Assembly: GCA_977030845.1 (NCBI GenBank)
Contig: OZ365110.1
Location: forward strand, 34,038,001 to 34,102,000
Length of the DNA stretch: 64,000 bases
Source of the DNA: Fimbriosthenelais zetlandica
Taxonomy: Eukaryota
Direction: 5' to 3'
The position numbers were made by a program, and so were the translations under genes. The notes under the pieces were generated by a model. The model did no database searches and had not been told where the DNA came from. It was given only the letters and a program-made list of their open reading frames with translations. Shown here one piece after another: positions 13,816-39,562 of the stretch. Within the stretch, counting starts at the first letter, position 1; each line of letters opens with the position of its first letter.

Positions 13816-15168
13816 TCACACACCCCTCATGCCTCGACCCAGGAAGTACAGTTCAATATCTTCCAGTGATCTTCCCTTTGTTTCGGGAACATATTTCCAC
13901 ACAAAGACCAGAGCCAAGGTGGTAGAGAGGCCGAAGAGCGAGAAAGCTCCCGACTGTCCGATAGAACTAACAATGGTGGAGAACCCCTTGGTGACGAGGA
14001 ATGAGGTTCCCCAGTTACCCATACAGGCGATTCCCGAGGCTGTGCCTCGGACTTTAACAGGGAAGACTTCAGACATCAATAGAGCCGGGATGGGTCCCCA
14101 GCCTAAAGAGAAGGCAACAATATAGAGGAGAAGCGCAGCAAGGGCCAACCACCCGGCATCATTCTGAAGCTTCCACTTGTAGAATAAACCCAGAGTGAAG
14201 CACGCGATGGCCATACCAGCACCAGACAGTAGAAGTAGAGGCCTCCTACCTGCCCGGTCCATCAAATACACTGACCCTGCAGTGGCTAACACCTGGACTA
14301 AACCAATGGCACTGGTAGCTAGATACCCACTGTTGGTGTATCCAGCACTGTGGAATATATCTACAGTGTAGAACATAATCACGTTAACCCCCGTACACTG
14401 CTGGAACGCCATGATAGCCAGTGATACCTGAAGAGGGCGGAAAACTTCAGGTTTCAAGAATTCAGACCATTCCACGACATCGTTTTTATCAGGGAGTGAT
14501 TCCTCAATGTCTGAGAGTTCATCCTCTACATCCATGGTATTACGTAACCACTGTAAGGCGCTGATGGCCTCCGCTCTCCTACCCCTCATTAACAACCACC
14601 GGGGGGTCTCCGGGGCCCTCCTCAGGAGGATAATGGCCGCCAGTGGAACGATCAAGGCCAGACCTGAGAGGAGCTGCCAGCCGAAGTAAAGCCCCATAGT
14701 GAAGACAACGAGAATACCCACAGTGATACCGAGCTGGATGGCGCTGCCCAGCATACCTCGCATCTCCTTAGTGGACGTCTCAGCGATGTAAACCGTCATT
14801 ACGACCGTAGCGATGCTTGAACCGATACCTTTACTGAGCCGTCCAAGGTACATGTAGCTGAGATCCACACCGCCACGGATGATTGAGATGTAACCAATCA
14901 TCATAAATACACAGCTGATCATCAGGGTTTTTCTGCGGCCATACCTCTCTACCAACCACCCGGCTATAGGGCAGCCTATCAGACCGCCCAGTGTGAGGAG
15001 TGAACCCAGCCAGGAGGCTTCATCAGCTGTTACTATACCCTGACTCTCCATGTCAGGCAGGGCGGGGGATGTATAACCGATACAATAACCAAACGCCAAG
15101 GCTACCAGGATGGCAGCCCCGGCCGCCTGTAACATGTTATTGTTACCACTCATCTTACGTCGGTACAT
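13816..15168 (-). CDS. MFS sugar porter, Tret1/GLUT8 (SLC2A8/SLC2A6)-like; intronless CDS
   Basis: 450-aa ORF with about 12 hydrophobic segments. Sugar-porter motifs: ERYGRR, YIAE, RGMLGS, PETPRWL, QQCTGVN..FY, DRAGRR, GWGPIP..LMSEVFP, VPETKGRSLEDIE. A splice acceptor lies just upstream of the ATG (about 15182), implying a 5'UTR intron. Confidence 0.93.
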   Translation of the reverse strand: MYRRKMSGNNNMLQAAGAAILVALAFGYCIGYTSPALPDMESQGIVTADEASWLGSLLTLGGLIGCPIAGWLVERYGRRKTLMISCVFMMIGYISIIRGGVDLSYMYLGRLSKGIGSSIATVVMTVYIAETSTKEMRGMLGSAIQLGITVGILVVFTMGLYFGWQLLSGLALIVPLAAIILLRRAPETPRWLLMRGRRAEAISALQWLRNTMDVEDELSDIEESLPDKNDVVEWSEFLKPEVFRPLQVSLAIMAFQQCTGVNVIMFYTVDIFHSAGYTNSGYLATSAIGLVQVLATAGSVYLMDRAGRRPLLLLSGAGMAIACFTLGLFYKWKLQNDAGWLALAALLLYIVAFSLGWGPIPALLMSEVFPVKVRGTASGIACMGNWGTSFLVTKGFSTIVSSIGQSGAFSLFGLSTTLALVFVWKYVPETKGRSLEDIELYFLGRGMRGV

Positions 15169-17117: not shown

Positions 17118-19716
17118 ATGAATCATCTCCGTTCATTTAGCATGTCTGCAGGACTGGGTGAGTATAGGATTTCTGTAAATTACTTTAAAAGTTTGTGTGA
17201 CTGTGTTTGCCATCGTGCTCCAGTCTCCAGGCCAGGATCGAGCCGGGCCCGGGGCAGGGACCCCATCCCGTGACTGTCACTGGATCAAGGATCAAAGTTG
17301 TGTAACTGTTACTATATTATATGATAAGGTTTACACATACTGTACACAGTAAAACCGCATAGTGAACATCTCTGTCATTATTAAGAAACACTTGGAAGTT
17401 ATATACATTCTCAGAGTCTCAAGGCCAAGTTTAGCCTTTAGGTACGGTACCGGTAATATTAATACTAATAGGTGTTGACAACTGTTGCTCCTGTTAATGT
17501 TATTGAATGACAGTGTTGGCGCTAGTATTTTTGAGTACCGGTATGTGGTCCTTTAGATTTTTGTTGTTGTCCTGTAGTGGGTATGTATGTAGGAGGGTTA
17601 TTTTGGTGATATGGATGGCAGTACCGGTACCATCATAAAAGCCCCTATAAATTATATCTAATTTATTTGACACATTTTATGATGCAAGTGTATACAGGCT
17701 TACAGGGGCCTGTTTCAAAACGAATATTAGCCATGGACTTAGTATTGCTAATATTCCTTTTGAAACAGGGCCCAGCTTTTTTACTGAAATAAACGTAACG
17801 GCAACCCTAGACATTATCTTCACAATGTGACTCGTAGATGCTTTGAAGTATTTGTAATTCACTTAAAAAAATATTTATGAACATTCTTGAATATGATTGA
17901 TATCCACAATTATAAGATATTTTCATTCAATATCGAGTCTTGCTCAGCTGTTATGATTGCTTACCGGTATTTAATTTTTAATTTTATTTCAGCACGTCGC
18001 TGCTGTTCCAGTAAGAGCGTCTTGAGGCATATTTCCACCATACCGAGGAGTCCTGACGTCAAAGAGTATGATTACGTCATCGTGGGTGCGGGGTCCGCCG
18101 GATGCATCCTGGCTAACCGTCTGTCTGCAGACCCTAATAACAAGGTCCTAGTACTAGAAGCGGGACCGCCGGACAAAACCTGGAAGATCCACATGCCGGC
18201 GGCTCTCATGTATACGTTATTTGACCCCACGTATAACTACTGTTACTGGACTGAGCCTCAGCAGAACCTGGATGGACGGAGGCTGTACTGGCCTCGCGCG
18301 CGTGTCTGGGGTGGATGCTCATCACATAATGCTATGGTTTATATCCGCGGGCATGCGTTAGACTATGACGGCTGGGAAGCGGCTGGAGCCAAGGGCTGGT
18401 CTTACGCCGATATCTTACCTTACTTCAAAAAAAGCCAGACACATGAGCTTGGTGAAGATGAATATAGGGGAGGGGATGGACCTACACTGGTCAGTCGAGG
18501 TCAAGGTGAAAATCCACTACATCAGTGCTTCCTGGACGCTGGTCAACAGGCAGGGTATCCCTTCACTGATGACTTGAATGGATACCAGCAGGAAGGGTTT
18601 GGATGGATGGACAGAACGATATGGCAAGGCAGGCGATCCAACGCCTCCAACTCCTACCTGCGACCAGCTCTATACCGCGATAATCTAGATATAGAATCCA
18701 TGGCTTCAGTCCGTAAAGTCATACTAGAAGGGAAGAGAGCCAAGGGTGTGGAGTACAAACAGGGGGGTATCCTGAGGGAGGTGAGAGCAGGGAAGGAGGT
18801 GATACTCAGTGGGGGAGCTATAAATAGCCCTCAGTTACTCATGTTATCCGGTATAGGACCAGCTGACCACCTTAGACACCATGAGATTCCGGTCATTCAG
18901 GATCTACCAGGTATAGGTGAGAATCTACAGGATCATCTAGAGGTGTATGTACAACATCAATGTAAGCAGCCTATTACTCTGTACTCTTACCAGTGGAGGT
19001 TCCCCATCACCATGGTAAAGACGGGTATAGAGTGGTTCCTCAGTAAGACGGGCCCGGCCGCGTCCACCCATGTAGATACGGGCGCTTTTATCCGGTCTAA
19101 ACCTGGTATTAAACACCCTGATATACAGTATCATTTCCTCCCGTCAGTGGTCATCAACCATGGAGCCGGGCTCGGGGACTGCCACGCCTTCCAGGTTCAT
19201 GTGGGAACCATGCGGGCACACTCCCGCGGGACCATCAAACTGAAGAATAAAGACCCCGAAGAGTACCCACTGATCGACGCCAACTACCTTAGTGATCAAC
19301 GCGACGTGGAGGATTTCAGATCCAGTGTACGCTTAACCAAAGAAATATTCGCACAGAAAGGTTTTGATGAGTTTAGAGGGGATGAGATACAACCAGGGGT
19401 AGATTGTACATCAGATGGTCAGTTAGACGCGTTTGTTAGAGCTAGAGGTGAGAGCGCCTACCATCCGTCCTGTACGGCTAAGATGGGGTTAGAGACGGAC
19501 CGCATGGCCGTGTTAGACCCGCAGTGTAAGGTGTACGGTGTGGACGGGTTGAGGGTAGTAGACGCTTCTATAATGCCGCGTGTGGTCAGTGGTAATCTAA
19601 ACGGTCCAGTACTCATGTTAGCTGAAAAAGCAGCAGATATGATACTAGGTAAAACTCCTCTACCTAAATCAACGGCTGCGGTATATCAGCCTAAAACAAT
19701 AGACACACAAAGATAA
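17118..19716 (+). CDS. CHDH: Choline dehydrogenase, mitochondrial (GMC oxidoreductase)
   Basis: Exons 17118-17157 and 17993-19716 join in phase 1 to give a transit-peptide-like MNHLRSFSMSAGLARRCCSS. Motifs: YDYVIVGAGSAGC (FAD), LEAG, WPRARVWGGCSSHNAMVYIRG, GENLQDH, YHPSCTAKMG, LRVVDASIMP..SGNLNGP..MLAEKAADMI. Confidence 0.95.
17706..17773. mobile_element. Roughly 70-bp palindromic miniature element; second copy at 49508-49577
   Basis: GGGCCTGTTTCAAAACGAATATTAGC ... GCTAATATTCCTTTTGAAACAGGGCCC forms a hairpin, and a related sequence recurs 32 kb away. Confidence 0.6.
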
Positions 19717-25669: not shown

Positions 25670-28600
25670 CTAGAAGCCCTGGTCATGTACGGTATTCATG
25701 TCTTTCTCCGTGACGGGGCATGACGTATGTCTGTTATATCGCCCGCGCGGGGGCGTACGTAACATAACGCCCCCCGCACCCCCCTCCTCCTTCTCCCCTC
25801 CACCATACACCCCATTCTGATCTACAGGCTCCTGTAGTCTATTCTCAATATCCTCCGAGTCTTCTCTCATGTCGGTAACTGAGGGAGCACGGACTACCGG
25901 GATACACCTTGGTTGTGGTTTGAATATACTAGCCAGGCCCTTCCAGCTATCCGCATCACTGGGAGCTGACGGCCGTAACATTGACTCATCTTCCTCGGGC
26001 GTTGTTCCCCGTGAGAAGAAACCAAAGAAGAATCTGCGGCTGGATGTGGGGCTCTGTACCGGGGTGACGTTCTGACTGTGAGCCGGGGTAACGGGGAGTG
26101 ACTGTACCATCCTTGATGTGTAAGACAGACTTGACATCTCCATCTCCGACTCGGAGCCCCGCATCCCCATGTAATCAGCACGGACTGAGAGGCGTCGGCG
26201 ACGAGGCGACGCGATCACAGACTCGTACAGACGATGCTTCATGATCTCTGACGAGATGCGTCGTGAGCGAGCGTCCTCCTGCATGTTCATACGCTTGATA
26301 GCGTCCAGCTGGCTCAGGTTCTGAGACGACCCTGGAATGACATGGACAATTAATATGAATTATGAAATGTTAAAATTAAAAGGTTCCCCCCCGACCACCC
26401 ATCCACTCATCTGGTTTGAACAGGTCTCAGGAATGTCTCTAGAGATCTCAAATTCTAAAAAGGCGCTTTTCTTACATTCGCCTGAAAATTCGTTGCCTGA
26501 CTCGAGTCTGCGCCTAAAGCGTATCAGCAGTGGCTCGTTTTCAGGCAAATTGCTAACCATTCATGGCCAATTTTTACAAATTCATCTATGCCACTTTCAC
26601 CCAGAATATAATCAGGGAAATTCCACCTTACAGTAAGGTGCTGCTTTGTTGATAGTGCCACTTTAAGTTATCGAAATTAGGTAAATCATATTGTCTCTAA
26701 AGGAGAGAATAGTGATAGATGAAGAATGCTAGATTATTTTATTTAGAACTAAGTTATTTAAATGGGCCTTAAAATGTTTATTACTAAGCAAATTACCAAA
26801 AATCATTATAACACTCTCATTATTAAAAACATAGTATGTTTTATACGGTTATTTTAAAACAATGAAGCGCAACGCAAACGTGAAATTATTTAACTAAAAT
26901 AAGCTATAAAAATATACATTTTTCAGTAAATCTGCTCAGACTGCAATTCACCAAAACACAAGTTTCCATGCTGCGGCTCTAGCAATGTCATCACAGGAAA
27001 TTGGCATAAAAATTCTCAAAATAAATTCAACAAAGTCAAATAAAATTATTTCATGTTCTATCCTAATATTGTTTTCTCGCACAAATAAATTTGAATTATG
27101 TTCTAATATATCCCCTGTGGAGGGCGGTGGCAGTAGTTGGTGGCGGGTGTGGGGGGGGGGGGGGGGGGCAATGGTGGGAGGGCGGTGGCAGTAGTTGGAG
27201 AGGGGATGGGTAGAGGGTATAGACCTACCAACTGGCAAGCACCTAGAACCGGGCAGTTGCCAAGTGGTAATGTCTGAGATGGGGAATGTATCAGTAAGGG
27301 TGGTGTGGGAGCATGTATTAGAACAATGCGTAATAGAATGTGAACAAGTAGAGGTTGGAGGAAGGCCTGGGTCGTGATTACCGCCAATCCCCCATCTATC
27401 AGACCAGGCTCTCCACAATACATACTTGTATGTAGAAGAGAATAGAGGATACAATACTCGTTTGGCAGAAAACGAGTAGCCTAAAGAATTCTATTCTCTC
27501 TCTATTCTCTTACAACACATAGTATGCTATACTTGGTGGTCATCGCTACCTCTATCTTTACATGTTATACTTTGGAAAAATTTAAAATTGGAGAAATTCA
27601 GAAAATAATAATTATTAGTAATTAATAATAAACATTTATTCCCCTTTTCTATCTTTTTAAAAGAACAAGAACAGCCCTTGACGCTCAATGAGTGTTAGAA
27701 TTAATTTTTGCCTCTAGATTTTGTTTTAAATCTGCAGCAGTTATCTTCAATGGCTAAAGAATTAATTTAATTATATTTTACTTAGAAATTGAAACTTGTA
27801 ATCTTGTCCTTCTTACGGGGAAACTGTTAACTTTCCACCTGTTACAAGTGTAGTAGACCAACAAATCTACACCTTCTGTCCAATAATTGATGCTCTTCCG
27901 GAGCTTAACCATGTAAATGTCAAATGTAAATGTTATGTATCCTCTAAAATAAGACAACTGTAAATCAACTAATACTGGAGTACGGCCTATAGCTATTATA
28001 TAGAAAACAAAATTCAAAATTCAGACGTATGAAAGAGAAAAGACTTAAGAGATGAAAAATTAATGTATACAAATGAAAAATGTATTGAAACAACTGAAAA
28101 TTTTTAATTTCAAAATGTCTATAAATGTCACTTTAGTATCTGAGAACTGCATTATTTGTTCAACTTAAAGAAATCATTTATACATTATATATATTTTATT
28201 TAGGCTAATATAATTTAATGTTGAGTTCAGCATGAACATGGAATTAGCCAACCTGAATCAACTGAACTTAACCGCAAAACGAGCAAAAAACTGACGTTTC
28301 AGATTTTTTTCAGGAAGCAAAATTAATGTAAAATTTCGTTTTCTCATCCAAAAAATAAACAAGAATTTTTCAACTTGGCAGGTTAGCTTTTTTGACTCAC
28401 CATTTTTAGGAGTGTCTTAAAACATCATGAGAAGAATGAAGAGTAGATTTTGTAAGATGATAAAGTATGATCTGATGAAAATGATTTTAACAGGGAACGA
28501 AACCTCTACACTACAGTACATAAACACACATGTTATGTCTACCGTACATATTAAGTCACTTACCTGAAACCTTTTTATATTATTTCAAACAAAGCCTACC

Positions 28601-30566
28601 CCTAGCTAAGCTTACTAATTGTTGATCCTGTAAAGGTTCAGACCCACTAAAGCGATTTTCCAACCTATGACCATCAGATTTACTCCTAATGAAACCTAGA
28701 CTTGCCCAGCTAGCGAGGGGAGAAGGGAGTCAATGCGGAAGGGAGTTGTAACTCCAGTCCTGTCATGGGGACGAGGGCTAGTCCAATGTAAGAGTTACCA
28801 ATTGTTAAGGAAATCTGATGGACGTCGGATGGAAAATCGGAGGAGTGGGACTGGACCCTTACTTGCAGTAAATAATAATAACCAAAACAATAACGAACAT
28901 GCCTGAGAGTATTTCTGGGTACATACAGGAAGAAAGTGGATATTCTATCAATGTATCATTTTCAAACCTTCACTTTTTAATTCTTAAAAAAAAAAGATGG
29001 ATTTTAGGGATTTTTAAATCCATAAAAAACAGACTTCCAGGGCTGGACTTCCAATGCTTTACGCTCAATTCATCACATATAAGACTTCAGATCTATGTGC
29101 TCTTGTAAATTGTGGTAATTAATAAAATAAATGACCCAGTTCAGGGAAATTAAATAAACAAAATCAAATATACATAATTTTGGTGTTTTGCAACTAAAAC
29201 TATGTAGACCTATGAGATCTGTGCGCTGTCCAGTCCGTAATGCTAGTGCATCGCAGAACTGCGCTTAAATGTACCCAATCCCAGTGAGAAAATAAAATTT
29301 CCAATTTCTTAAAATAAAAATGAGTTAAAGAATGAAGGTTTGTAATATTTTGGGTTAGTTTTTGAGCTGCGCGCGCAGTTGTTAGACATCCTCACTTACT
29401 TGTCATCAGAGGGTCGCTCATGCCTGTTAGGTTAGAGTTGATTAATGTTAATCATTAATTAATACAGGTAGTACAGGTAGGGTTTATAAACGAGGAGGGT
29501 ACAAAGCTGCCAATAACAGAGCTTCTACTAGACCTTCCTTCAAAGTAGAAAAAAACAAACATTTCATTGCTTTCAAGTTGAAGTTGATTTCCCCCGTACC
29601 CCTCAAAATTAGACCAGAGGACCCTAGCAGAAGCTCTGGTGTGGCAAGACAAAATCACATATATAGAGTAATGGTGCAGCAAGAGATGGAGATAGAGGTA
29701 GAAGCAAAATGTAATTAATACAGAGCTCTAGAATGTGCAGGTTTTATAGGATAATTTATAGTAGTACAGAGAAGGGTTCCTTCTATAACTAAATGATTCA
29801 TGAACCAATGATACTGGCACAGTATGAGATGAACTTTCAAAAATAGTCCAGGTTAAAAATCCAGTCATACATAATGATCGAAAAATGACTAGATATGAAT
29901 GATTCTTGATATCATGATAGGAATGTCAATGATATGAATGAGATCTGATAGGGCATACAGTCACCCCACATATTGTAGTATTAATAGCACACACTGGACA
30001 AAGACAGTCATCCCAGCATTTAATGGAAACAACATTTTCATCCATTTTCTTAATTATTTCTTAAAAATTACAGAATGATTTATCTTTCCATCGACCCATC
30101 TCTAATTTAAGCCTAAATAGTGCATCCACTGTGAAATTGAAACAGTAAATTCCCTGATTCTTTAAATTTAGCCAATATTTCTTTCAAATTGCCAGATTTT
30201 AATTTAAATTTTCCTGATCTTTTCCTGACTGAAAATCTCAATCACCCCAGTTTTTCCAGGATATCTGGGAAGCCTGCCAGGTTTGATTTTGACATTATAA
30301 AATGAAGATGAATAATACCAACCAAAAGTGGCGAGGTTGGTGTTAGAGCCCATGGCGAGGCACTCCTTGGAGCTGCTCAGGGACGCCATGGCCTGGTATT
30401 TAGAACTGCCCCGGGAGAACGACCTGAAGCGGCCCCGGGGGCGGGGCGGGTTGAAGGAAAAGTTAGCGAACTCGTCATCGTGGTCCTGTCGTCGGAACAT
30501 GCCGTAGTTGTGTTTAGCTCGAGCGATGCTCGGAGAGGAGGTTGTAGAGTCAGTGGCTTCCGCCAT
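25670..30566 (-). CDS. KIAA1191: KIAA1191/P33MONOX-like intrinsically disordered protein
   Basis: Exons about 30566-30323 and about 26330-25670 join in phase 1; a possible cassette exon lies near 29540-29475. Short motifs recall human KIAA1191 as remembered: GMFRRQDHDD (vs GIYRRAVSYDD), SLPVTP..SQNVTPVQSP..RRFFFGFF (vs QSTPSTTPHSSPKQRPRGWF), and C-terminal EKDMNTVHDQGF* (vs PRDLNVLTPTGF*). The gene is head-to-head with ARL10, as in human. Confidence 0.6.
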
Positions 30567-32840
30567 ACCAGGTTCCCCCCTGAAAAGACAAATTTATATA
30601 TTGAAAATATTAATATGAATGGCCCTTGCTCTCTCAGTGGGTGGGGTGTCTCGAGGTGGGGCAGAGGCGGATATGGTGGGGAATTTCTACCGGTCAAAAA
30701 ATATTTTGGGTCAAAGGCCAGATCCACCCACTCCCACCTTCATATGGCTTGGGCCCCCGGACACCCCTCACCATCCAACATTTTTTATCCCTCCCTCGAG
30801 CAGGGCGTGGTCATAAAGTTTGCTTTCCCCTCGCCCTCAGTTCACAAACACACACCCCAATATTACGTTTTAAAAAAGTAAGCCCCTGGAGCGCCCTCCC
30901 CACATACCTAAAATGCAATCTAGAGATAGTAATCAGAGCAAAACATAGAAGTACTGATTAATAGAACATTAATTATGACTATTTACTTGGGGTAGAAACC
31001 CATGACATTGAATGGAAACAAAGAACCTCGTAGAAACTTACAAAATGAAATGAATAAATAAATCATTAAGTACAACTATATGGTGAAGTCGGGGGAGGGA
31101 GCATACCTGGGCTGGAAATCCTCATCACTGGCTGACCAGATCACAGTGCTTATCAATAGCCTTAGCCCTATACGTGCTGCCTTTCATCCATAGACAAATA
31201 GACATCATTATTGATTTCTGGCAGGACTATTGAAGACCAATGCTGGCCTCCAAGTATGGCCTATAGCCTATTGATCACGTAACATGATTCTCACTCTATG
31301 CTCCACTTAAAGGGTATCATTCAAAATTCATAGGAATTTCTTTCTTTCTTAATTTTCAATTCTTTCATTTAAAAAAAAAATGGTTATTTCCTATTGCGTT
31401 ACTTAGACAATAAGTACATCCCTCAGGGTTATACTAATTATCAGGAGATAAATGAAAATAATTATACTTTTCGTCAGCATTGGACCAAATAACATCTCAA
31501 TCAGAAATCTGAATCAGTCATTAAGATTTATATTTTGTAACGCCAGAATATTGATTATTGTATAAGACACTTAGTCCTGGCCTGAGGCCGAGTCACTAAT
31601 ATTTGAGTGTTGGGCTAGCTGAGGTTACAGGCCAGGTTGGGACACGGTCAATCATTGTGTATTGACTATTTCATTTTGTGTATTGACTAAGAGGATTTGT
31701 TCTTCCAAAATAGCTGTCCTTTCTCAAGAATCCAGTCAAGGACAGGTCCAATATTTGGTTATTATATGACTGATTATTATTTATTTGCACGTTTAGCAGA
31801 CAAATTAATAGATTCAATCAGCTGATTCTATAATCAGATGGTCCAACATTCTTTTTAATTAATGGCATAGCCATAGGCCTACTATTATGCCGATGAAGGA
31901 TACTTCAGACACAGCCTAGGCCTACAAAGTACACCCCTTTATTTGTCAACAAACCATGCATCAACATTAATGTAATTTTAGTTATTTTTAATGAGAAAAT
32001 TAATGGATAATGCATTATCTACCAAAATATTTATAACCAGACATGGGATTATATAATACATACACATTCATAATGAGATCACATAAAACGTCGACTAACT
32101 GTAGTCTATTCTATACATTTGGAGTATTTAAATACCAGATAAATAAATAAACATCCCTGACTCAGTCTTGTCCCAAGTCATCACATCCAGTTGTCACTGC
32201 ATTCTCAATCAAATTTGCACCCATTTTATCCATGCACCTACTATAAATCGACCAGATATCAATCAGTTCATGTTTTGGGAATCGAATTTAGTCTGTTTCA
32301 CAGCTTGAGATACCAAGGAATTAATTTGAAGGGTAAGAAACGATGCTTTTACAGGTCCTGTACAGTCTCAATGTCAAAGTGAGGAGAGAGAGAAATGTTG
32401 ATGTGTGACAACAATCGGGGGCGTGGACATGAAAACACCCTCAAAAGCACCCTAATAACATTGAATTTCTCACCTTAAAAACCAAACGCTGTCTACAAGC
32501 CAGTGATCTAGTGGTTATCCATAACTGAGGCGAGGAACGAAGGTTTAAAGCGATTATTTAACAAGAAATGTACGAAGGAAATCCTCCAGGCATAAAACGA
32601 TAAGAGAGTACCGACCACATACTCTCAACGACAAAATACTCATTTCAGTAAAAATAAGATTTTGAGATTATCTAAAGTTTATTTTCAGAATCTCAACATA
32701 TATATTAATTATGATTCACGATCAGAAAGAAAAAATGAGAATTTGGTGGAGAAAAAGATGATATTTTGGCATAAAAGTGAAGCATGAATTCTGGTTTGAG
32801 ATTATAAAGATGGGTCACGTGACATGCGGCGTTAGTAAAC

Positions 32841-34719
32841 ATGGCGGCCATGGGATGTAAAAATGTACATCCCTTAACTAAAGCAGCTATTATCGCAGGC
32901 TCTGGCTTGGCACTCACCGGCTTAGCTTACTATTTATACAGAAAACTACACGGAGATGCCGAGGACAGCAGTGATGAGGGATTTGAGGATTCGCCAAGGG
33001 TAAAATATTGCACTGTTACTCGCCATTTTGGGGAATGTTTTGGTTTGACAACATCCCTGACCCTGCCCCTGCCTTGACATCCCCTGGACTTGGCGGGCTT
33101 GGGCCTGGTTGGGTGGTATTTAGATTTGGCCCCGGGAATTTTTAATATTCTTGTCACTGTGCGGTTTTGCTAAACCTAGAAATACTATATAAAATATTAT
33201 TGATTCCACAGCCCAGATATATTTGAATGTTGGTTGTAAAATTGTTATTTATCATTTCATGTCAAATTATTTATGACCAATTAATTTACAGGTACCGTAA
33301 CTTAAATTTTAAAATAAACTCATAATTTACATAAGCTCATAATTTAAAACCTTATCAGTTCATGGCATATTAGTAAATTCGATATTAGGAACTCCTCTGT
33401 TAACAATTGCCTCTGATTATTTAACCTTTCTCATATTATTGACATTAATAATTGTCTAATTTATTTTCATTTTACAGAGTGAAGAACCAGAGAAGAAAGT
33501 GTTAATGTTGGGGTTAGATGGGGCTGGTAAGAGTACGCTGTTAGCCAGCCTGGGCAAACAAGACCCGGCTGTAGAGACGCAACCCACAGAGGGCTTCAAC
33601 GTCATGTGTGTACAGACAGAAAACATCTCACTCAACATCTGGGAAAGTGAGTTTATATTTAATCTTAGATCGTAAAAATGTTAATTTAAATTCTCTATCA
33701 GAGTGCCAGTATTTGGCTAAAGTAGAGACACAGGCCAGGGTTGCCACAGGGAAAGGTCAGTGAAGTTGGGCAACTCCCCTTCGTGGTAAGCCTGGCCCTG
33801 TATTAATTTAAATTAAAATGGGAGGAAATGGTGACTGTTTAATCATTTGATTTAATGATTGTCTTGTCACATTGTTCAGGGTCAAAAATTAATAATTTTT
33901 CTCAAGGAAATTTGGGCAACAGTCCCATGTTCTGAAAACCTTTTCTCAGACCCCAAAATCTTGACTGAATGTACAATTTGGGGAAAGCACAGTACGGGTA
34001 CTTTGTCTCTGTTTTGTGAGGTTGTGATTTTGTGATTGTAGTTGGCGGCGCGCCCACCATGCGGGACTACTGGAGGAAGTTTCTACATGACACGGCCGTG
34101 CTGTGTTACGTCATAGATTCAGCTGATAAAACCAGACTGTCAGAATCCGTGAACGAGCTGAGAAACCTGCTGAAAGAGGACGCTCTCAAGGGGGTGGGCG
34201 TCATCATAGTCGCCAATAAACAGGTAAATGCTCAACATCAGAATGATTTATTTATTAATTATGCAGCATTTACATAGCGCCTTAACCATTCGAAATGCTC
34301 TAAAGTGCTGAACATAAAATCAATTTAAAAGGAAAATATGAATAAACAAATTGTGACTATACAACAGCTGTTGTTGAAAGTAAAGGATATAAATTTTCCT
34401 ATTCCTATTTTGTCCTGTTTTTCAAGCAATTCTATTTTCCAATTTTGCCCCGATTTCGTCCTGTTTTCTTGCTATTTTGTGATTAATACATTTCTCGCAT
34501 TTTCTCTATTATATTCTCCTGAATTTAAATAATTTTACCTGTGATGTATTTTCACTATATTTCCACCTTTTTCAGGACTTGCCAGGAGCACTGACACCTG
34601 AGAAACTGAAGGAAGAGATTGGTATGGACATGTGTCTACTGGCCACCCAGGTGCCCAGGGTGGGGCAGCACCAGGGTGTCACTGATCTAGAGGAAATGTT
34701 GGTGGCTGTGTCCTCCTAG
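32841..34719 (+). CDS. ARL10: ARL10/ARL9-like ARF-family GTPase with N-terminal membrane anchor
   Basis: Exons 32841-32999, 33478-33646, 34042-34223, 34576-34719. Motifs: G1 LGLDGAGKST, switch I PTEGFN, G3 variant WEIGG (E for D, as in ARL9/10), G4 NKQD. The N-terminal helix AAIIAGSGLALTGLAYYLY replaces a myristoylation motif. Confidence 0.85.
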
Positions 34720-37092
34720 TGGACATCATACAAACTACATTCCTTATTAAATCACTTTATCAACTATTTACACTCTATTCCCTTCATTTATCGCCCAATC
34801 TCCTTATTTATTGTTGAAGCAATCACATTTTTGCATCTCAAAGTGTAGTGATACCCCTACACCTTCCCCTACCCCTACCCCCGCCCACACAGAGGTGTTT
34901 CTGTCCTGGTATATTCCAGGATGTGCTCAAAAGCATCCGTCCTTCTTTGACATTTTCCTCAGTTGATTTTTAAACTATTGTCGCTAAAATATTACCTGTT
35001 GGACCTATTGCGCAACTTTCTTAGATCTTAGCCGTAAACCTTACTGTAGAGTATAAAACAAGTTATTATAAAATAATAAGAAATGTTGACATGAAAAATT
35101 ATAATGTCCTATTTCACTTGCATATAAGATCCCGTAGAGACAAGGCCCTCTGTGAATAAGAAACATGTATACTGTAATTTCTATGTAGGCCCGGTGATAT
35201 GGATATGAAGGAATAGATAGTGTACAGATTCATATTAACTCCAAACCACTGGGCCCAGTCTTTCTGCTCAGCTCTCTCTCCTGATATATTTTACTGACAT
35301 GTTTAAATTTGTGTGCATTGACTTGATCCGTTAAAAGGGCTGCAATAATTATCCAACTTGTTATTAAATTGGTTTCTATATTTGCTTGAATGTTTGAAGA
35401 AATTCAGGGAAATCGGTTAAATACATTATACTATTATAAAAGATATCTAGCTTAGATGTGTACATTGGTTACTTGTATATAGTACAGATTATTCCTGTGA
35501 CAATCCAACATTTTGGTCCTTAATGCTGGAAAGAAAATAGTGTGGAAATTATTGAGTGTTCAGGACAAATGTGCTTACTACATTCTGTATCTAAAATACC
35601 AATTGTTGCTTAGTGCTGTTATACTAGTGTTCAGTAAAACTGTATCTGTATAGGGAACACTTCGGGGACTGTGAGAAAGTGTTTACTATATGTGGAGGTG
35701 TTCACTAATCAGAGGGAATTATAGGCTATATGACAACTCAAGAACCTGGGACTGAAAGATTGTTCACTATATGGAGTTGTTCACTAACCAGGGGTGCTCA
35801 CTCATGGAGCGTTTACTATTGAATCCTGAATGTGAAACATTAGATGTGTGAATATATAGGTAGCTATGCTTGCCATAAACAAATCATTACATGTATTTAA
35901 TTATAGGGTAAAACTAGTGTTGAAGGAAAGGAGTGATAACTACAGATTTGATTATCTCTTTATAAGGTAACAAACAATATTCCCGGGTTCTGGTACCGAG
36001 GTTTCATTATAAAATGCGGAATTTTTCACTTTTTTTCAAGTCCAGTTTACAAGAATGCGGATGGTAAAAGATGTAAAAATGTTTAAAATATAATTATTGC
36101 GCGGAGCAGAGCCAGGGGATATTTTTTGGGCCTAATTGTCTGTGATGCTTTCAATAGCTGCAGATTATACTGGTTGGACCAAAAGTTAGTTCTGACGAGA
36201 GAGACATAGTGATAGTGTAAAGATAGTGTATATTAATCATTCCACCGATATAATGAATATAGAGAGTGACATTTCATTATGAACCTTCCATCTTGACACT
36301 ATTATACATTTTGGATAGATCTGTGTGCTTACTTGGATCATTTTTGATGATAATAAACTTCTTGAAAATATTAAAAGTTGCTTTTTTTAATAGTTTTTTT
36401 GTCTTAGCAGTGGGAGAACTTTTACATGCCCCTCACCACATATATTGGGAGACATGGCTGGCCTTTTAAATGCCCTTACCACAGACAGTGGGAGACATGA
36501 CTGGCGTCTTTGAATTTCAATTTCTTGGCCTATACAAGTTATAAATGACAAGAAATAACACTAAAGAATCCTTCCCCTGCAGATTTTAAAATGAGGATCC
36601 CTACACAAGACTAGTAAAGAAAATATATCTTCCTTTTTATTTCGCAAAAACAAATCTTGTACATGTATAACTCATGATAATCTCTTGACTATGACGACAT
36701 GAGTATCCTTCCAGCATAGAAGTATTCTTTACACTTTACAAAAGCCCATTCAGCCTGGGATTCTGTGTTGGCCTTTTAAGATAAATTAGAAAGAAACTGG
36801 CAATCAAGGGGAAAATATACAAGTTGTATGCACTCCATTCTCATATTCTAATTGTATGTATTTTGTGTACAATTCCATATCTAATCTTCTCAGTGACCCA
36901 GCTGCAATATTTACAAAATTATGTACAGTTCACTCCAGTATGAGTATTATCTCCCTATATATGGTGAGATACTGGATGCAGAATCAATGTCTGTGAGCTG
37001 AGACTTACTCAGTACAAATAGAAAGACCTGTTCTTCATTATCAGTTGGATTTTTTCTTGGTTTTCTATGTAAGGCCTGCCCTAGATTCTATA

Positions 37093-37795
37093 TCAGTTGG
37101 CTTGTGCTCGATTTTCTCTTTCTTTTCTGGATTTGTGAGCGCTGTAGAGAACACCGCCTAAGAGGGAGACGACAGTAAAACTCTGAGCTGCCACGCGCAG
37201 GCGCATCATCTTCTGAGACATGGCTTTGTTTCCACTCTTCATCTGCCACAGTCCGTACGTGAGGGCAAAGACTGTCACCGACAAACCTGGAGGAAAGATC
37301 AATCAGCAAAATCAGTGACTGAAAATTAGTATAAACTGAATAAAAATCTAAAGCGAAAGAATAAAGTTATTTCTCATTTAGATTCTAGTCTAGATAAACT
37401 GCTAATCTTCTTTTTTAACTTACGATAAGTTAAATATCATACATATGAGGTATATTATTGAATTAAGTAAAGTCTAGGTAAAACTAAGCCACAAATATTC
37501 AACAATTAATACAAATCTGAAATTCCCCAGACCCCGCCTCCCAGCCCTTCAACCATTGACCGGGGTCGATGGCCCAGGTCCCGCCCAGCCCCCAGATGCA
37601 GACCGTTCTCCCGAGCCCGGGCAGTGGACATCCCAATAAACATCATCAATAACTTCACTCACCGAGAGGCACCATTGGATTCTCCTTCGTTTTCCTCAAC
37701 ATTTTCTCTTTAAAAGTCTCCGGTGCGGGCCAGTTGAGAAGTTCATCTCTGTTTGGTATCTGTAAATAGGAGAAATCTTCACGTTTTCCAGCCAT
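37093..37795 (-). CDS. HIGD2A: HIG1 domain family member 2A-like (respiratory supercomplex factor)
   Basis: Exons 37795-37663 and 37286-37093 join in phase 1. Sequence FKEKMLRKTKENPMVPLG..T..ALTYGL..MKSGN..MSQKMMRLRVAAQSFTVVSL is the HIG1 signature. Confidence 0.92.
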
Positions 37796-37929
37796 TCTTA
37801 TGTTTGCCCTTCCAGTCTTTTATAACTGAAAATGGTGAAAGTTGTTAACATATGAGTTGTAAGCCGTTAACACGGCGTGGTAACGGGTAGAGTTGCAGGC
37901 GGGTGTGTTTTACCATTTTCACCACCACA

Positions 37930-37937
37930 CCGGAAGT
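37930..37937. promoter_or_regulatory. ETS/GABP-type site in the HIGD2A-NOP16 bidirectional promoter
   Basis: CCGGAAGT lies in the roughly 205 bp between the divergent ATGs at 37795 and 38000. Confidence 0.45.
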
Positions 37938-37999
37938 TAGCTCAGTAAGGCCAGAATCCCACGTGTGTTACACATTTAACACAAAATAGCTAAATAATA

Positions 38000-39562
38000 A
38001 TGGGGAAGGCCAGGAAAAAGAAGCATACTTTCCAGTATGAGAAGAACAGAAAGAAAGCTTGGAAGAAATCGAAGAAGCAAGTCACGATAGAATGGTATGT
38101 ACGAGTTTGAAGGTAGTGTTACATTGTTTCATCATCGAATGATCATCAACACACACGACTTCTTGTCTTGAGTGCCAAAAATTAATTCTAATACACACCA
38201 CTTCAAGCATTAGCCATTACATAAGCTACTCCACTAGTCTTTATTCTAATTTATTACAAAATATTATGGGGGAGATGCTATATCAGGGGACGAAATAGCC
38301 GGTGGCCAGAGGCCATACGATTTTAATTAATTGGTTCGAGAATCAAATGGCCCGGTTGCCATTTAAAAATTCTGATATTTATCATTGACCGCACTTTTTC
38401 GGCCTATTTGATTTTGACAATGGCCATTTGGTTTGGAGATCAAATGGCCCGATGGCTTTGTGAAAATTGTCTCTTATTTCGACCCCTGTATATTTTTCCT
38501 CATTCTCGAACATTTTTTTTTTCAGTGAACAGATTAAGGACGCCTGGGACTACAGAAAGTCGGTGGCCAAAAACATGAGTGACATGGGTCTATCAACCAA
38601 CGCCAACAAGACGCTAGCCATCCCTAAAGCTAAAGACATGGGCAAGAAAAAACAGGAGAAAATGTCCATAGATGAGGCGAAGAAGGTGGCCAAGAAACAG
38701 TTCGTCGTCGAGGGTGAGTTCCTGTTTCTTCTTCAACTAAAATTTGTTCCGTTTGAAAAAACAATCTGCTAGAATTGTCATACATGTACTAGGTATTTTC
38801 TTATTGTAACAGATTAACAAATTGGTGTAGAAAATCCAATCATAGAACTATTTATGGTCCAATGATATAATTATTTAAGAATGGTTGGCAAACTTTCGAA
38901 GTAACTTCTTTAACTTTTAAATGCTGTAACACTGTATTTTATATTTTAAATTAAATTGTTTCATATTTTATTTACAGAGCTAGTGGAGGAGGCAGCCCTA
39001 CCTGAGAAGAAGACGCTCACATTGTCAGAACCACTCGTTCAGTTCTGTGTTTATATGATGGAGAAATATGGCGAAGATTATACGGTAAGTTCTTTTCCCT
39101 TTATTTCAGGGTTCCCAGCACTTCGTGAAAACAGGATTTCCTGAGTAAGCCCTTAAATGCAAGGAGATATTTTAGTCATATTAAGCATTCCATGATTTAC
39201 ACTTTTTCTCAAATTCCCTGAGTTTTACCTGTCTGGGAAAAGTGGAACTCAATTTCCCTTATTTCCAGAGTCGCTGGGGACCCTGTTAAATAACAATTTA
39301 TTATTTTCTTTTCTCATTTCTTCCTCCAAAGCTGATACTCTTAGTTATGTTTTGGGGCATGTGCCGGTATTGGTGTTTCCCGTTGTCTGTTTCCAGTTTC
39401 TAATAAAGGAATTTATTTTTTAAACAGAAAATGGCGAGGGACAGGAGAAACCATTACCAAGAAACACCGAATCAAATCAAGAAGAAAATCAAGACATTTA
39501 AAAATATCCCAGAACAGTATGAAAAGTATCTAAAAAGCAAAACGACACCCATGGACCATTGA
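38000..39562 (+). CDS. NOP16: Nucleolar protein 16
   Basis: Exons 38000-38094, 38526-38713, 38978-39084, 39428-39562. Motifs: IKDAWD..KSV..NMSDMGL, MMEKYGEDY..MARD.RNHYQETP.QIKKKI..F. Confidence 0.93.
38284..38488. mobile_element. MITE in NOP16 intron 1; same family as 3993-4210
   Basis: TIR CAGGGGACGAAATA ... TATTTCGACCCCTG. Confidence 0.8.
39107..39285. mobile_element. hAT-like MITE in NOP16 intron 3
   Basis: TIR CAGGGTTCCCAGC ... GCTGGGGACCCTG with one mismatch. Confidence 0.6.

What the first reader, a model, noticed from the sequence alone, without database searches (positions are those of the whole stretch)
25670..39562. KIAA1191-ARL10-HIGD2A/NOP16 block matching human 5q35 gene order
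Seen: KIAA1191-like (-) head-to-head with ARL10-like (+), followed by the head-to-head pair HIGD2A (-) / NOP16 (+) with ATGs about 205 bp apart. Established (from memory): human 5q35.2 has KIAA1191(-), ARL10(+), NOP16(-), HIGD2A(+) consecutively. Inference: a four-gene microsynteny retained from a distant common ancestor, with both divergent pairs preserved and the NOP16/HIGD2A pair inverted as a unit. This points to bidirectional promoters as the constraint. It also supports the otherwise weak KIAA1191 call and highlights the few motifs conserved in that poorly understood protein.
Basis: partly seen in the sequence, partly recalled or inferred. Interest (0 to 1): 0.7.

Follow-up and report, generated by a model that had tools for sequence, protein, structure and literature searches.

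The report
Old four-gene neighbourhood shared with humans
Four small neighbouring genes in this invertebrate (probably an annelid worm) sit in almost the same order and orientation as on human chromosome 5q35; this is a real but ordinary case of anciently kept gene order, and the fourth gene's identity (KIAA1191) remains probable, not proven.

Summary
At 25670-39562 I built four intact spliced genes: a 301-aa KIAA1191-like gene (-), a 217-aa ARL10-like gene (+), a 108-aa HIGD2A-like gene (-) and a 174-aa NOP16 gene (+). The HIGD2A and NOP16 start codons are 204 bp apart.

- **ARL10, HIGD2A, NOP16:** all three identities passed the tests I could run.
- **Gene order:** ARL10-NOP16-HIGD2A is the mammalian order. 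NOP16/HIGD2A is a listed human divergent pair (TSS distance -15 bp). Chance adjacency is negligible.
- **KIAA1191:** this call stays weak. The gene belongs to a conserved, disordered, single-copy family of about 85 unnamed proteins. Only one member touches Pfam P33MONOX, below threshold (best 18.2 bits; cut-off 27). A profile search of 1.8 billion proteins gave no link to that family.
- **Other species:** two also have the KIAA1191-like/ARL10-like head-to-head pair. Other lineages show rearrangements.
- **Cause:** a shared bidirectional promoter is plausible for HIGD2A/NOP16. It is unshown for KIAA1191-like/ARL10-like (2.3 kb apart). No RNA runs were listed.

Verdict: a new member of a known kind, conserved ancestral microsynteny enriched in head-to-head pairs (Irimia et al. 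2012). Interest is low to moderate. The scan noted this same stretch once more (s1-188415), not on other DNA.

The parts
25670..26331 (-). KIAA1191-like gene, last coding exon (220 codons plus stop). Holds the conserved MQEDARSRRIS-EIMKHRLYESV helix, SPRRRR-S, QSLPVTPAHS, RRFFFGFFSRGTTP and SWKGLASIFKPQPR motifs and the C-terminal KDMN...GF.
   Evidence: ORF and acceptor. 31-62 homologues, E down to 1e-117. Alignments A1/A2. Single copy in the genome. AlphaFold mean pLDDT 55, only two short helices.
30323..30566 (-). KIAA1191-like gene, first coding exon (ATG at 30566; 81 codons plus 1 base; donor G|GTTGGT). Conserved DDEFANFSFNPPRPRGRF motif.
   Evidence: tblastn of full-length relative P0012 aa 14-88. 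Splice phase fits exon 2. The same two-exon layout is seen in L001, L004, L006, L029 and L033.
30567..32840 (.). Spacer between the divergent KIAA1191-like and ARL10-like start codons (2274 bp). A good 3' splice acceptor (TTTGTCTTTTCAG|G, 30592-30580, minus strand) lies 13 nt before the KIAA1191-like ATG. The palindrome GTCACGTGAC lies at 32814-32823.
   Evidence: Sequence. GC 0.37, CpG o/e 0.49, not a CpG island. No RNA data.
32841..32999 (+). ARL10-like exon 1: no Gly2, hydrophobic segment AAIIAGSGLALTGLAYYLY (residues 15-33), then an acidic DEGFED linker.
   Evidence: Kyte-Doolittle mean 1.4 over 19 aa. The same layout is seen in L004 and L006.
33478..33646 (+). ARL10-like exon 2: P-loop LGLDGAGKST, switch I, ends ...NIWE.
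   Evidence: Pfam Arf E 1.1e-12. Splice sites.
34042..34223 (+). ARL10-like exon 3: switch II reads WE-IGGA (no catalytic Gln). Ends ANKQ of the NKxD motif.
   Evidence: Pfam Arf E 3.7e-18. Best PDB hits are ARL3, ARL1 and ARL2, at most 53 bits.
34576..34719 (+). ARL10-like exon 4 (short C-terminal part and stop).
   Evidence: Homologous exon in L006.
37093..37286 (-). HIGD2A-like exon 2: two membrane helices and the motif Q-KMM-R-L-R-VAA-Q.
   Evidence: Pfam HIG_1_N 68 bits. PDB best hit is human HIGD2A 45.7 bits, against HIGD1A 27.9.
37663..37795 (-). HIGD2A-like exon 1 (ATG at 37795): ...APETFKEKMLRKTKENPMVPL.
   Evidence: PDB best hit is human HIGD2A, E 3.3e-4.
37796..37999 (.). 204-bp spacer between the HIGD2A-like and NOP16 start codons: candidate bidirectional promoter. 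Holds CCGGAAGT (37930) and CACGTG (37960).
   Evidence: Function is inferred only.
38000..38094 (+). NOP16 exon 1 (MGKARKKKHTFQYEKNRKKAWKKSKKQVTIE).
38526..38713 (+). NOP16 exon 2 (CEQIKDAWDYRKSVAKNMSDMGL...).
   Evidence: Pfam Nop16 25.5 bits. The only PDB hit is human NOP16 8fkp, E 4.6e-5.
38978..39084 (+). NOP16 exon 3.
   Evidence: Pfam Nop16 15.4 bits at profile 148-184. Splice sites.
39428..39562 (+). NOP16 exon 4 and stop.

Best explanation
This is a compact 14-kb block of four intact single-copy genes inherited as neighbours from the common ancestor of this invertebrate and vertebrates. It is built of two divergently transcribed pairs: KIAA1191-like <-> ARL10, and HIGD2A <-> NOP16.

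Shown:
- The gene models.
- The ARL10-type, HIGD2A-type and NOP16 identities.
- The same neighbourhood in mammals, with the HIGD2A/NOP16 pair flipped as a unit.
- The KIAA1191-like/ARL10-like pair in two further species.

Inferred:
- HIGD2A and NOP16 are kept together because their promoters overlap in a spacer of about 200 bp, so any break between them would damage one or both genes.
- The KIAA1191-like gene is the positional orthologue of KIAA1191/P33MONOX (my odds about 65%). It is a mostly disordered protein of short linear motifs, not an enzyme-like fold.
- Its pairing with ARL10 is kept by shared upstream regulatory DNA or simply by the short distance.
For: - Gene models and Pfam hits.
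- ARL10-type: it has the N-terminal transmembrane-like segment and lacks the switch-II Gln, the features that the literature gives for Arl10 (PMC8358228; PMC12722892). Its best solved relatives are ARL3 and ARL2, as expected for an offshoot of the Arl2/3 clade. The genome's canonical ARL2-like and ARL3-like genes lie elsewhere, at C11:14.7 Mb and C10:51.8 Mb.
- HIGD2A-type: the window gene hits human HIGD2A at 45.7 bits against HIGD1A at 27.9. The genome's only other HIG gene (L003) gives the reverse, 46.9 against 22.1.
- NOP16: the only Nop16 locus in the genome, and human NOP16 is its only PDB hit.
- Mammalian order ARL10, NOP16, HIGD2A, CLTB. Human NOP16-HIGD2A divergent pair, TSS distance -15 bp.
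- KIAA1191-like: the only Pfam family with any signal below E 0.01 is the predicted one, P33MONOX (E 0.0024-0.0058). The hit lies at the collinear profile region 157-212 of 291 and needs both the middle and the C-terminal part of P0004 to score. The protein is of similar length (301 aa).
- L004 and L006 have ARL10-like(-)/KIAA1191-like(+) head to head. L006 also has a HIG exon beyond ARL10, in the window's orientation.
- The known kind: about 600 conserved ancestral microsyntenic pairs, enriched for 5'-5' orientation and <1 kb spacers (PMC3514665).
Against: - No member of the KIAA1191-like family reaches the P33MONOX cut-off, and the window's own protein gives no hit at all.
- The profile search of 1.84 billion representatives and the word-indexed search returned only unnamed relatives without PF15302.
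- Atlas and Foldseek gave nothing.
- No ARF-family tree with named references could be built, so ARL10 orthology rests on diagnostic features.
- No RNA or TSS data: none was listed.
- The KIAA1191-like/ARL10-like spacer is 2.3 kb, and the human pair is not in the <1 kb divergent-pair table.
- In L007/L008 a HIGD2A-type gene lies tail to tail with KIAA1191-like, with no NOP16 or ARL10 seen. In L031 the head-to-head neighbour is SURF4. In L029, L030 and L034 no block gene lies within the flanks.
- The taxon (annelid) is taken from other agents' notes, not tested by me.
Confidence: 0.75

Rival explanations
1. The block is truly ancestral but is retained neutrally. The genes are tiny and tightly packed, so few breakpoints fall between them in slowly rearranging genomes, and no shared promoter or co-regulation is needed.
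For: The whole block spans 14 kb. The arrangement is altered in several lineages (L007/L008, L031), as expected for a weak or absent constraint. The KIAA1191-like/ARL10-like spacer is 1.6-2.5 kb and shows no CpG island. No expression data are available.
Against: Both head-to-head junctions survived, while the one rearrangement between this genome and mammals flipped HIGD2A/NOP16 as a unit. The human pair has overlapping start sites. Genome-wide, 5'-5' pairs with short spacers are over-represented among conserved pairs (PMC3514665).
Confidence: 0.25
2. The 25670-30566 gene is not a KIAA1191 homologue. It is a lineage-restricted gene for a disordered protein that happens to sit beside ARL10, so the shared block has three genes, not four.
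For: 0 of about 70 scanned family members pass the P33MONOX cut-off, and only P0004 gives a weak hit. There are no PF15302 proteins among the hits of two profile searches. Atlas and Foldseek are blank. The own-genome scan with PF15302 is blank. Ser/Pro-rich disordered sequences produce spurious weak matches.
Against: The single weak hit is to exactly the family predicted beforehand out of 24,736, in a collinear position. Position, strand and length match KIAA1191 next to ARL10. The head-to-head pairing with ARL10-like is itself conserved in two more species at only 38-46% protein identity to the window gene. From memory only, human KIAA1191 ends ...RDLNVLTPTGF, close to P0006's ...KDLNVITPSNF.
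Confidence: 0.33
3. The Arf-family gene is not ARL10 but another, independently membrane-anchored ARL (for instance a lineage-specific offshoot of ARL2/3), so the resemblance to 5q35 is weaker.
For: No named ARL10 sequence could be compared. Best PDB hits are ARL3/ARL1/ARL2, because ARL10 is not in the PDB. N-terminal transmembrane regions arose several times in the family (PMC8358228).
Against: The combination of features fits Arl10: N-terminal TM, loss of the switch-II Gln, Arl2/3-like sequence, and metazoan single copy. Canonical ARL2-like and ARL3-like genes exist elsewhere in the genome. It also lies beside HIGD2A/NOP16 as in mammals.
Confidence: 0.07

Closest known systems
Human 5q35.2 segment KIAA1191-ARL10-NOP16-HIGD2A (and the same order in cattle BTA7)
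   Same: Same gene families, all adjacent. ARL10 lies next to the NOP16/HIGD2A pair, and NOP16/HIGD2A are head to head. KIAA1191(-)/ARL10(+) divergent is from established map knowledge, not checked with a tool here.
   Different: The HIGD2A/NOP16 pair is inverted as a unit (here ARL10 -> HIGD2A -> NOP16). The further human neighbours (CLTB, FAF2, RNF44) are absent. Here the block is bounded by a GMC oxidoreductase gene and an orphan basic-protein gene. The KIAA1191 counterpart is too diverged to pass the Pfam model.
Conserved ancestral microsyntenic pairs (CAMPs), Irimia et al. 2012, Genome Res 22:2356 (PMC3514665)
   Same: Unrelated genes kept adjacent across bilaterians, with enrichment of conserved 5'-5' orientation and short spacers explained by shared cis-regulation.
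   Different: I could not check whether these particular pairs are in that paper's supplementary lists, since no supplement is held. Here two such pairs lie side by side.
Human divergently paired genes (DPGs, TSS distance under 1 kb), e.g. HSPD1-HSPE1 and NOP16-HIGD2A (PMC3815023 Table S1)
   Same: HIGD2A/NOP16 here have start codons 204 bp apart on opposite strands, like the human pair with TSS distance -15 bp.
   Different: Start sites are not mapped here. KIAA1191/ARL10 is not a DPG by that definition in human, and is 2.3 kb ATG to ATG here.
Pfam PF15302 P33MONOX (KIAA1191)
   Same: Similar length and mostly disordered. One relative (P0004) matches profile positions 157-212 plus a second stretch.
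   Different: Scores are 17-18 bits against a cut-off of 27. The window protein itself gives no hit, and there is no sign of a flavin- or NADPH-binding fold.

Membership tests
ARL10 (Arf family; Arl10/Arl9 clade) | Arf-type G domain | tested here: met
   Pfam PF00025, E 1.1e-12 and 3.7e-18 on exons 2 and 3. P-loop GLDGAGKST and the NKQD motif are present.
ARL10 (Arf family; Arl10/Arl9 clade) | N-terminal transmembrane region instead of a myristoylated Gly2 (PMC8358228; PMC12722892) | tested here: met
   The protein starts MAAMG... (no Gly2). Hydrophobic 19-mer at residues 15-33, KD mean 1.4. The same is seen in L004 and L006. This is a hydropathy estimate only, not a dedicated TM predictor.
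ARL10 (Arf family; Arl10/Arl9 clade) | Switch-II glutamine missing (PMC12722892) | tested here: met
   WE-IGGA in the window. GGAK in L004 and GGAE in L006, where canonical paralogues in the same genome read DVGGQ.
ARL10 (Arf family; Arl10/Arl9 clade) | Groups with named Arl10/Arl9 in a family tree | not tested
   No named ARL10 sequence could be obtained. ARL10 is not in the PDB, and the exon query found no candidates. Indirect evidence: the nearest solved relatives are ARL3/ARL2, as the literature expects for Arl10, and canonical ARL2-like and ARL3-like genes lie elsewhere.
HIGD2A (type-2 HIG1 proteins, Rcf1 orthologues) | HIG_1_N domain | tested here: met
   PF04588, 68 bits.
HIGD2A (type-2 HIG1 proteins, Rcf1 orthologues) | Closer to HIGD2A than to HIGD1, with the other paralogue showing the reverse | tested here: met
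   Window exon 2: HIGD2A 45.7 bits, HIGD1A 27.9. Exon 1: HIGD2A E 3.3e-4. L003 (the only other HIG locus): HIGD1A 46.9, HIGD2A 22.1.
HIGD2A (type-2 HIG1 proteins, Rcf1 orthologues) | Q-x3-R-x-R-x3-Q form of the HIG1 motif (the type-1 form is I-x3-H-x-R-x3-Q; the motif is recalled from the Rcf1 literature) | tested here: met
   The window reads QKMMRLRVAAQ, human HIGD2A reads QLMMRTRIAAQ and HIGD1A reads IHLIHMRVAAQ in the printed alignments. L003 reads VFLMHLRVKAQ.
NOP16 | Pfam Nop16 match at the curated cut-off, with NOP16 as best solved relative | tested here: met
   Exon 2 alone scores 25.5 bits (cut-off 25), and exon 3 adds 15.4 bits at the collinear profile region. Human NOP16 is the only PDB hit, E 4.6e-5. 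It is the only such locus in the genome.
KIAA1191 / P33MONOX (PF15302) | Pfam P33MONOX match at the curated cut-off (27 bits) | tested here: not met
   The window protein gives no hit. Of about 70 family members scanned, only P0004 hits, at 16.9-18.2 bits, E 0.0024-0.0058.
KIAA1191 / P33MONOX (PF15302) | Profile of the family finds recognised P33MONOX proteins | tested here: not met
   hmmsearch of A1 against 1.84 billion representatives gave 55 hits, and the 10 most distant or longest carry no PF15302. The A2 search gave 62 hits, none with PF15302. The thresholds of these huge libraries need about 30-42 bits, so a remote link could be missed.
KIAA1191 / P33MONOX (PF15302) | Collinear shared motifs, including the extreme C-terminal RDLN...TP..F | not testable with these tools
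   No vertebrate KIAA1191 sequence could be fetched, and the resemblance is recalled from memory only. The family's own C-terminal motif [KR]D[ML]N..x..F is visible in A1.
Conserved divergent (bidirectional-promoter) gene pair | 5'-5' orientation with a spacer under 1 kb | tested here: met
   For HIGD2A/NOP16: 204 bp ATG to ATG. For KIAA1191-like/ARL10-like it is not met on ATG distance (2274 bp), and the start sites are unknown.
Conserved divergent (bidirectional-promoter) gene pair | Same pairing and orientation in distant lineages | tested here: met
   Human NOP16-HIGD2A is a divergent pair. KIAA1191-like/ARL10-like is head to head in L004 and L006. Exceptions are L007/L008 and L031.
Conserved divergent (bidirectional-promoter) gene pair | Shared promoter activity or co-expression | not testable with these tools
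   No sequencing run was listed for this DNA.

The most novel reading that the evidence does not exclude
The head-to-head pairing of KIAA1191/P33MONOX with ARL10 has been kept since the bilaterian ancestor because the two act together. On this reading KIAA1191 is not a mono-oxygenase but a disordered, phospho-regulated partner or effector of the mitochondrion/peroxisome-anchored GTPase ARL10. With HIGD2A next door, the block would be a small co-regulated mitochondrial unit. This fits the reported mitochondrial targeting of ARL10 and the cold-induced rise of P33MONOX in brown fat.
Probability: 0.1. Interest if true: 0.6.

Novelty: new member of a known kind. Interest (0 to 1): 0.3.

Why it matters
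It adds a clean example of two adjacent divergent gene pairs kept together between a spiralian and mammals. The one rearrangement respects the pair boundaries, which is the pattern expected if shared promoters constrain gene order.

Its more useful by-product is a set of about 85 invertebrate sequences. If their link to KIAA1191 is confirmed, they show which short motifs of that poorly understood protein are old. They also argue that the protein is an intrinsically disordered regulator rather than the mono-oxygenase its name implies. A conserved pairing with ARL10 would then give a concrete functional hypothesis for two understudied human genes.

On its own the synteny is not surprising, since hundreds of such pairs are known.

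Tried and rejected
1. Pfam scans of the KIAA1191-like exons, of 54 aligned relatives and of sub-fragments gave only P0004's sub-threshold P33MONOX hit.
2. A profile search of 1.84 billion representatives and two word-indexed searches found only unnamed relatives.
3. ESM Atlas searches with the window exon and with full-length P0012 scored below 0.8 to unrelated clusters.
4. The AlphaFold model is disordered (pLDDT 55), and Foldseek against Swiss-Prot models gave meaningless hits, with no P33MONOX.
5. An own-genome scan with PF15302 was blank.
6. The ARL10-like exon 3 as a query in the big protein collection found no candidates because of the length window. The Atlas gave only generic Arf clusters. 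The PDB lacks ARL10. No named-reference tree could therefore be built.
7. Two look-ups for sequencing runs listed none.
8. Paper searches for the four names with synteny, microsynteny or bidirectional found no prior description. The supplement of Irimia 2012 is not held. A peptide search for the recalled human C-terminus found nothing.
9. Five flank look-ups gave no ARL10, HIG or NOP16 within reach (L029, L030, L031/32, L033, L034). Four large ENA assemblies (holding P0002, P0004, P0015 and others) gave no DNA.
10. I sent no complex-prediction job. The spliced ARL10-like protein has no reference, and adjacency alone is not a reason to test binding.
11. I considered whether the MUS81-like/SIM-motif gene at 7370-9022 could be the counterpart of human SIMC1, which lies next to KIAA1191. 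I found no evidence and did not pursue it.

Full report
**What is there.** The window is eukaryotic DNA without gaps, from contig C10 of a 447-Mb, 79-contig assembly. Between 25670 and 39562 I built four complete spliced genes from open frames, canonical GT/AG sites and homologues.

- KIAA1191-like (-): 30566-30323 + 26331-25670, 301 aa.
- ARL10-like (+): 32841-32999, 33478-33646, 34042-34223, 34576-34719, 217 aa.
- HIGD2A-like (-): 37795-37663 + 37286-37093, 108 aa.
- NOP16 (+): 38000-38094, 38526-38713, 38978-39084, 39428-39562, 174 aa.

The HIGD2A-like and NOP16 start codons are 204 bp apart on opposite strands. The KIAA1191-like and ARL10-like start codons are 2274 bp apart.

**The three secure identities.**

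- *ARL10-like.* The exons hit Pfam Arf. The protein has no Gly2. It has a 19-residue hydrophobic segment at residues 15-33 followed by an acidic linker, and it reads WE-IGGA where canonical Arfs read WDVGGQ. An N-terminal transmembrane region and loss of the switch-II glutamine are the features the literature gives for the metazoan-specific Arl10, which is thought to derive from the Arl2/3 clade (PMC8358228; PMC12722892). In line with that, the best solved relatives of exon 3 are ARL3, ARL1 and ARL2; ARL10 itself is not in the PDB. The genome has canonical ARL2-like and ARL3-like genes elsewhere, and no second gene of this type among the loci I read. I could not build a tree with named references, so orthology rests on these diagnostic features.
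- *HIGD2A-like.* Exon 2 scores 45.7 bits to human HIGD2A against 27.9 to HIGD1A, and exon 1 also hits HIGD2A best. The genome's only other HIG1 gene (L003) gives the reverse, 46.9 to HIGD1A against 22.1. The motif is QKMMRLRVAAQ, as in HIGD2A.
- *NOP16.* The Pfam cut-off is reached on one exon. Human NOP16 is the only PDB hit, and this is the only such locus in the genome.

**The fourth gene.** It is real and conserved.

- Its last exon finds 31 relatives (E down to 1e-117). Profiles find 55-62 relatives, about 85 distinct proteins in all, and all are unnamed.
- Contiguous proteins of relatives cross the exon junction.
- It is single copy.
- It is predicted to be almost wholly disordered, with two short helices.
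- Strongly conserved short motifs are visible in A1 and A2.

Its link to KIAA1191 is weak. Of about 70 members scanned, only P0004 touches Pfam P33MONOX, at 17-18 bits (cut-off 27). The match is to profile 157-212 and needs both the middle and the C-terminal part of the protein. The window's own protein gives nothing. No recognised P33MONOX protein came up in the profile searches, the Atlas or Foldseek.

Three points favour homology. The sole weak hit is to the one family out of 24,736 that was predicted in advance. Position, strand and length fit. The pairing with ARL10-like is itself conserved (see below). The motif resemblance to the human protein is from memory only. I put orthology at about 65% and do not file the gene as a member.

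**Comparison with mammals.**

- A cattle gene list gives the order ARL10, NOP16, HIGD2A, CLTB, FAF2 (PMC7655849).
- A human 5q35.2 copy-number region holds the same genes.
- Table S1 of PMC3815023 lists NOP16-HIGD2A as a human divergent pair with TSS distance -15 bp; KIAA1191-ARL10 is not in that under-1-kb list.
- That KIAA1191(-) lies head to head with ARL10(+) in human is map knowledge that I could not check with a tool.

Here the order is ARL10 -> HIGD2A -> NOP16, so the divergent pair is flipped as a unit. No other 5q35 neighbour is in the window. The block is bounded by an intronless GMC oxidoreductase gene on one side and an orphan basic-protein gene on the other. Chance adjacency is negligible: about 3e-8 for the three secure genes and about 7e-12 for four (inference).

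**Other species.** I used relatives of the KIAA1191-like protein as handles.

- Two contigs of unknown taxa (L004, L006; 38-46% identity to the window gene) carry ARL10-like(-)/KIAA1191-like(+) head to head, 1.6-2.5 kb apart. Both have the same ARL10-type N-terminus and GGA switch II. L006 also has a HIG exon beyond ARL10 in the window's orientation.
- In L007/L008 a HIGD2A-type gene lies tail to tail 2 kb downstream of the KIAA1191-like gene. No ARL10 or NOP16 is seen, and FAM184 follows.
- In L031 the head-to-head neighbour is SURF4.
- Other contigs showed no block gene within the flanks.

The genes thus tend to stay linked, but the arrangement is not inviolable.

**Mechanism.** This is the known class of conserved ancestral microsyntenic pairs. 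They are enriched for conserved 5'-5' orientation and short spacers, and are explained by shared cis-regulation (PMC3514665).

- For HIGD2A/NOP16 a shared bidirectional promoter is the likeliest reason. The evidence is the 204-bp spacer, overlapping start sites in human, and inversion as a unit. The spacer holds CCGGAAGT and CACGTG. Function is not shown.
- For KIAA1191-like/ARL10-like the case is open. A good splice acceptor 13 nt before the KIAA1191-like ATG hints at an untranslated first exon nearer to ARL10-like. No RNA runs were listed.
- Neutral retention of a very compact block remains a serious rival.

**Taxon.** Other agents' notes call this genome probably annelid. I did not test that. 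My own data only show that it is not a vertebrate-like locus: identity to human HIGD2A is about 50%, and the P33MONOX model fails.

**Verdict.** It is a new member of a known kind, of low to moderate interest. The scan holds a second note on this same stretch (s1-188415), not on other DNA.

Noticed in passing
window 58969-59044 and 59111-59186 (+): Two tandem tRNA-Asn(GTT) genes, 66 bp apart.
   Followed up: no
window 13816-15168 (-) and 17887-19716 (+): Two apparently intronless genes just beyond the 3' end of the KIAA1191-like gene. One is a 450-aa sugar transporter (Pfam Sugar_tr, 319 bits). The other is a 609-aa GMC oxidoreductase of choline-dehydrogenase type. Intronless genes stand out among the spliced neighbours.
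   Followed up: partly
window 30580-30592 (-): A strong 3' splice acceptor (TTTGTCTTTTCAG|G) lies 13 nt upstream of the KIAA1191-like ATG. It suggests an untranslated first exon further towards the ARL10-like gene.
   Followed up: no
window 32814-32823; 37930-37937; 37960-37965: A perfect palindrome GTCACGTGAC (E-box/CLEAR-like) lies 18 nt before the ARL10-like ATG. An ETS-type CCGGAAGT and a CACGTG lie inside the 204-bp HIGD2A/NOP16 spacer. These are single motif matches, with no statistics or conservation test.
   Followed up: no
window 52896-53198 (+); 61315-61605 (+): A THEG-repeat exon (Pfam THEG, E 2e-30) and an ANF_receptor ligand-binding exon (23 bits, just under the cut-off). They belong to further genes downstream of the block.
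   Followed up: no
L003 (G000:C13:8651618-8654755), exons about 1423-1626 and 1748-1876 (-): The genome's only other HIG1 gene is of the HIGD1 type (best PDB hit HIGD1A, motif VFLMHLRVKAQ).
   Followed up: yes
L007 1701-6197 (-) (JGI metagenome 3300056788 contig): A 1280-aa ORF with a faint Endonuclease_7 hit and a 184-aa HNH_3 ORF sit upstream of that animal's KIAA1191-like gene. This is possibly an inserted mobile or viral element where ARL10 would be expected.
   Followed up: no
L029 and L030 (both ENA ERZ26859052): Two clearly different KIAA1191-like genes (P0042, P0026) come from one ENA sample. It is either a mixed-species assembly or two paralogues in one genome.
   Followed up: no
KIAA1191-like family (alignments A1, A2): The family is predicted to be disordered and conserves only short linear motifs (RRRR-S, several S/T-P sites, FGFFSRGTTP, WKGLASLFKPQPR). 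If it is KIAA1191, the name 'mono-oxygenase' for that protein looks doubtful.
   Followed up: partly
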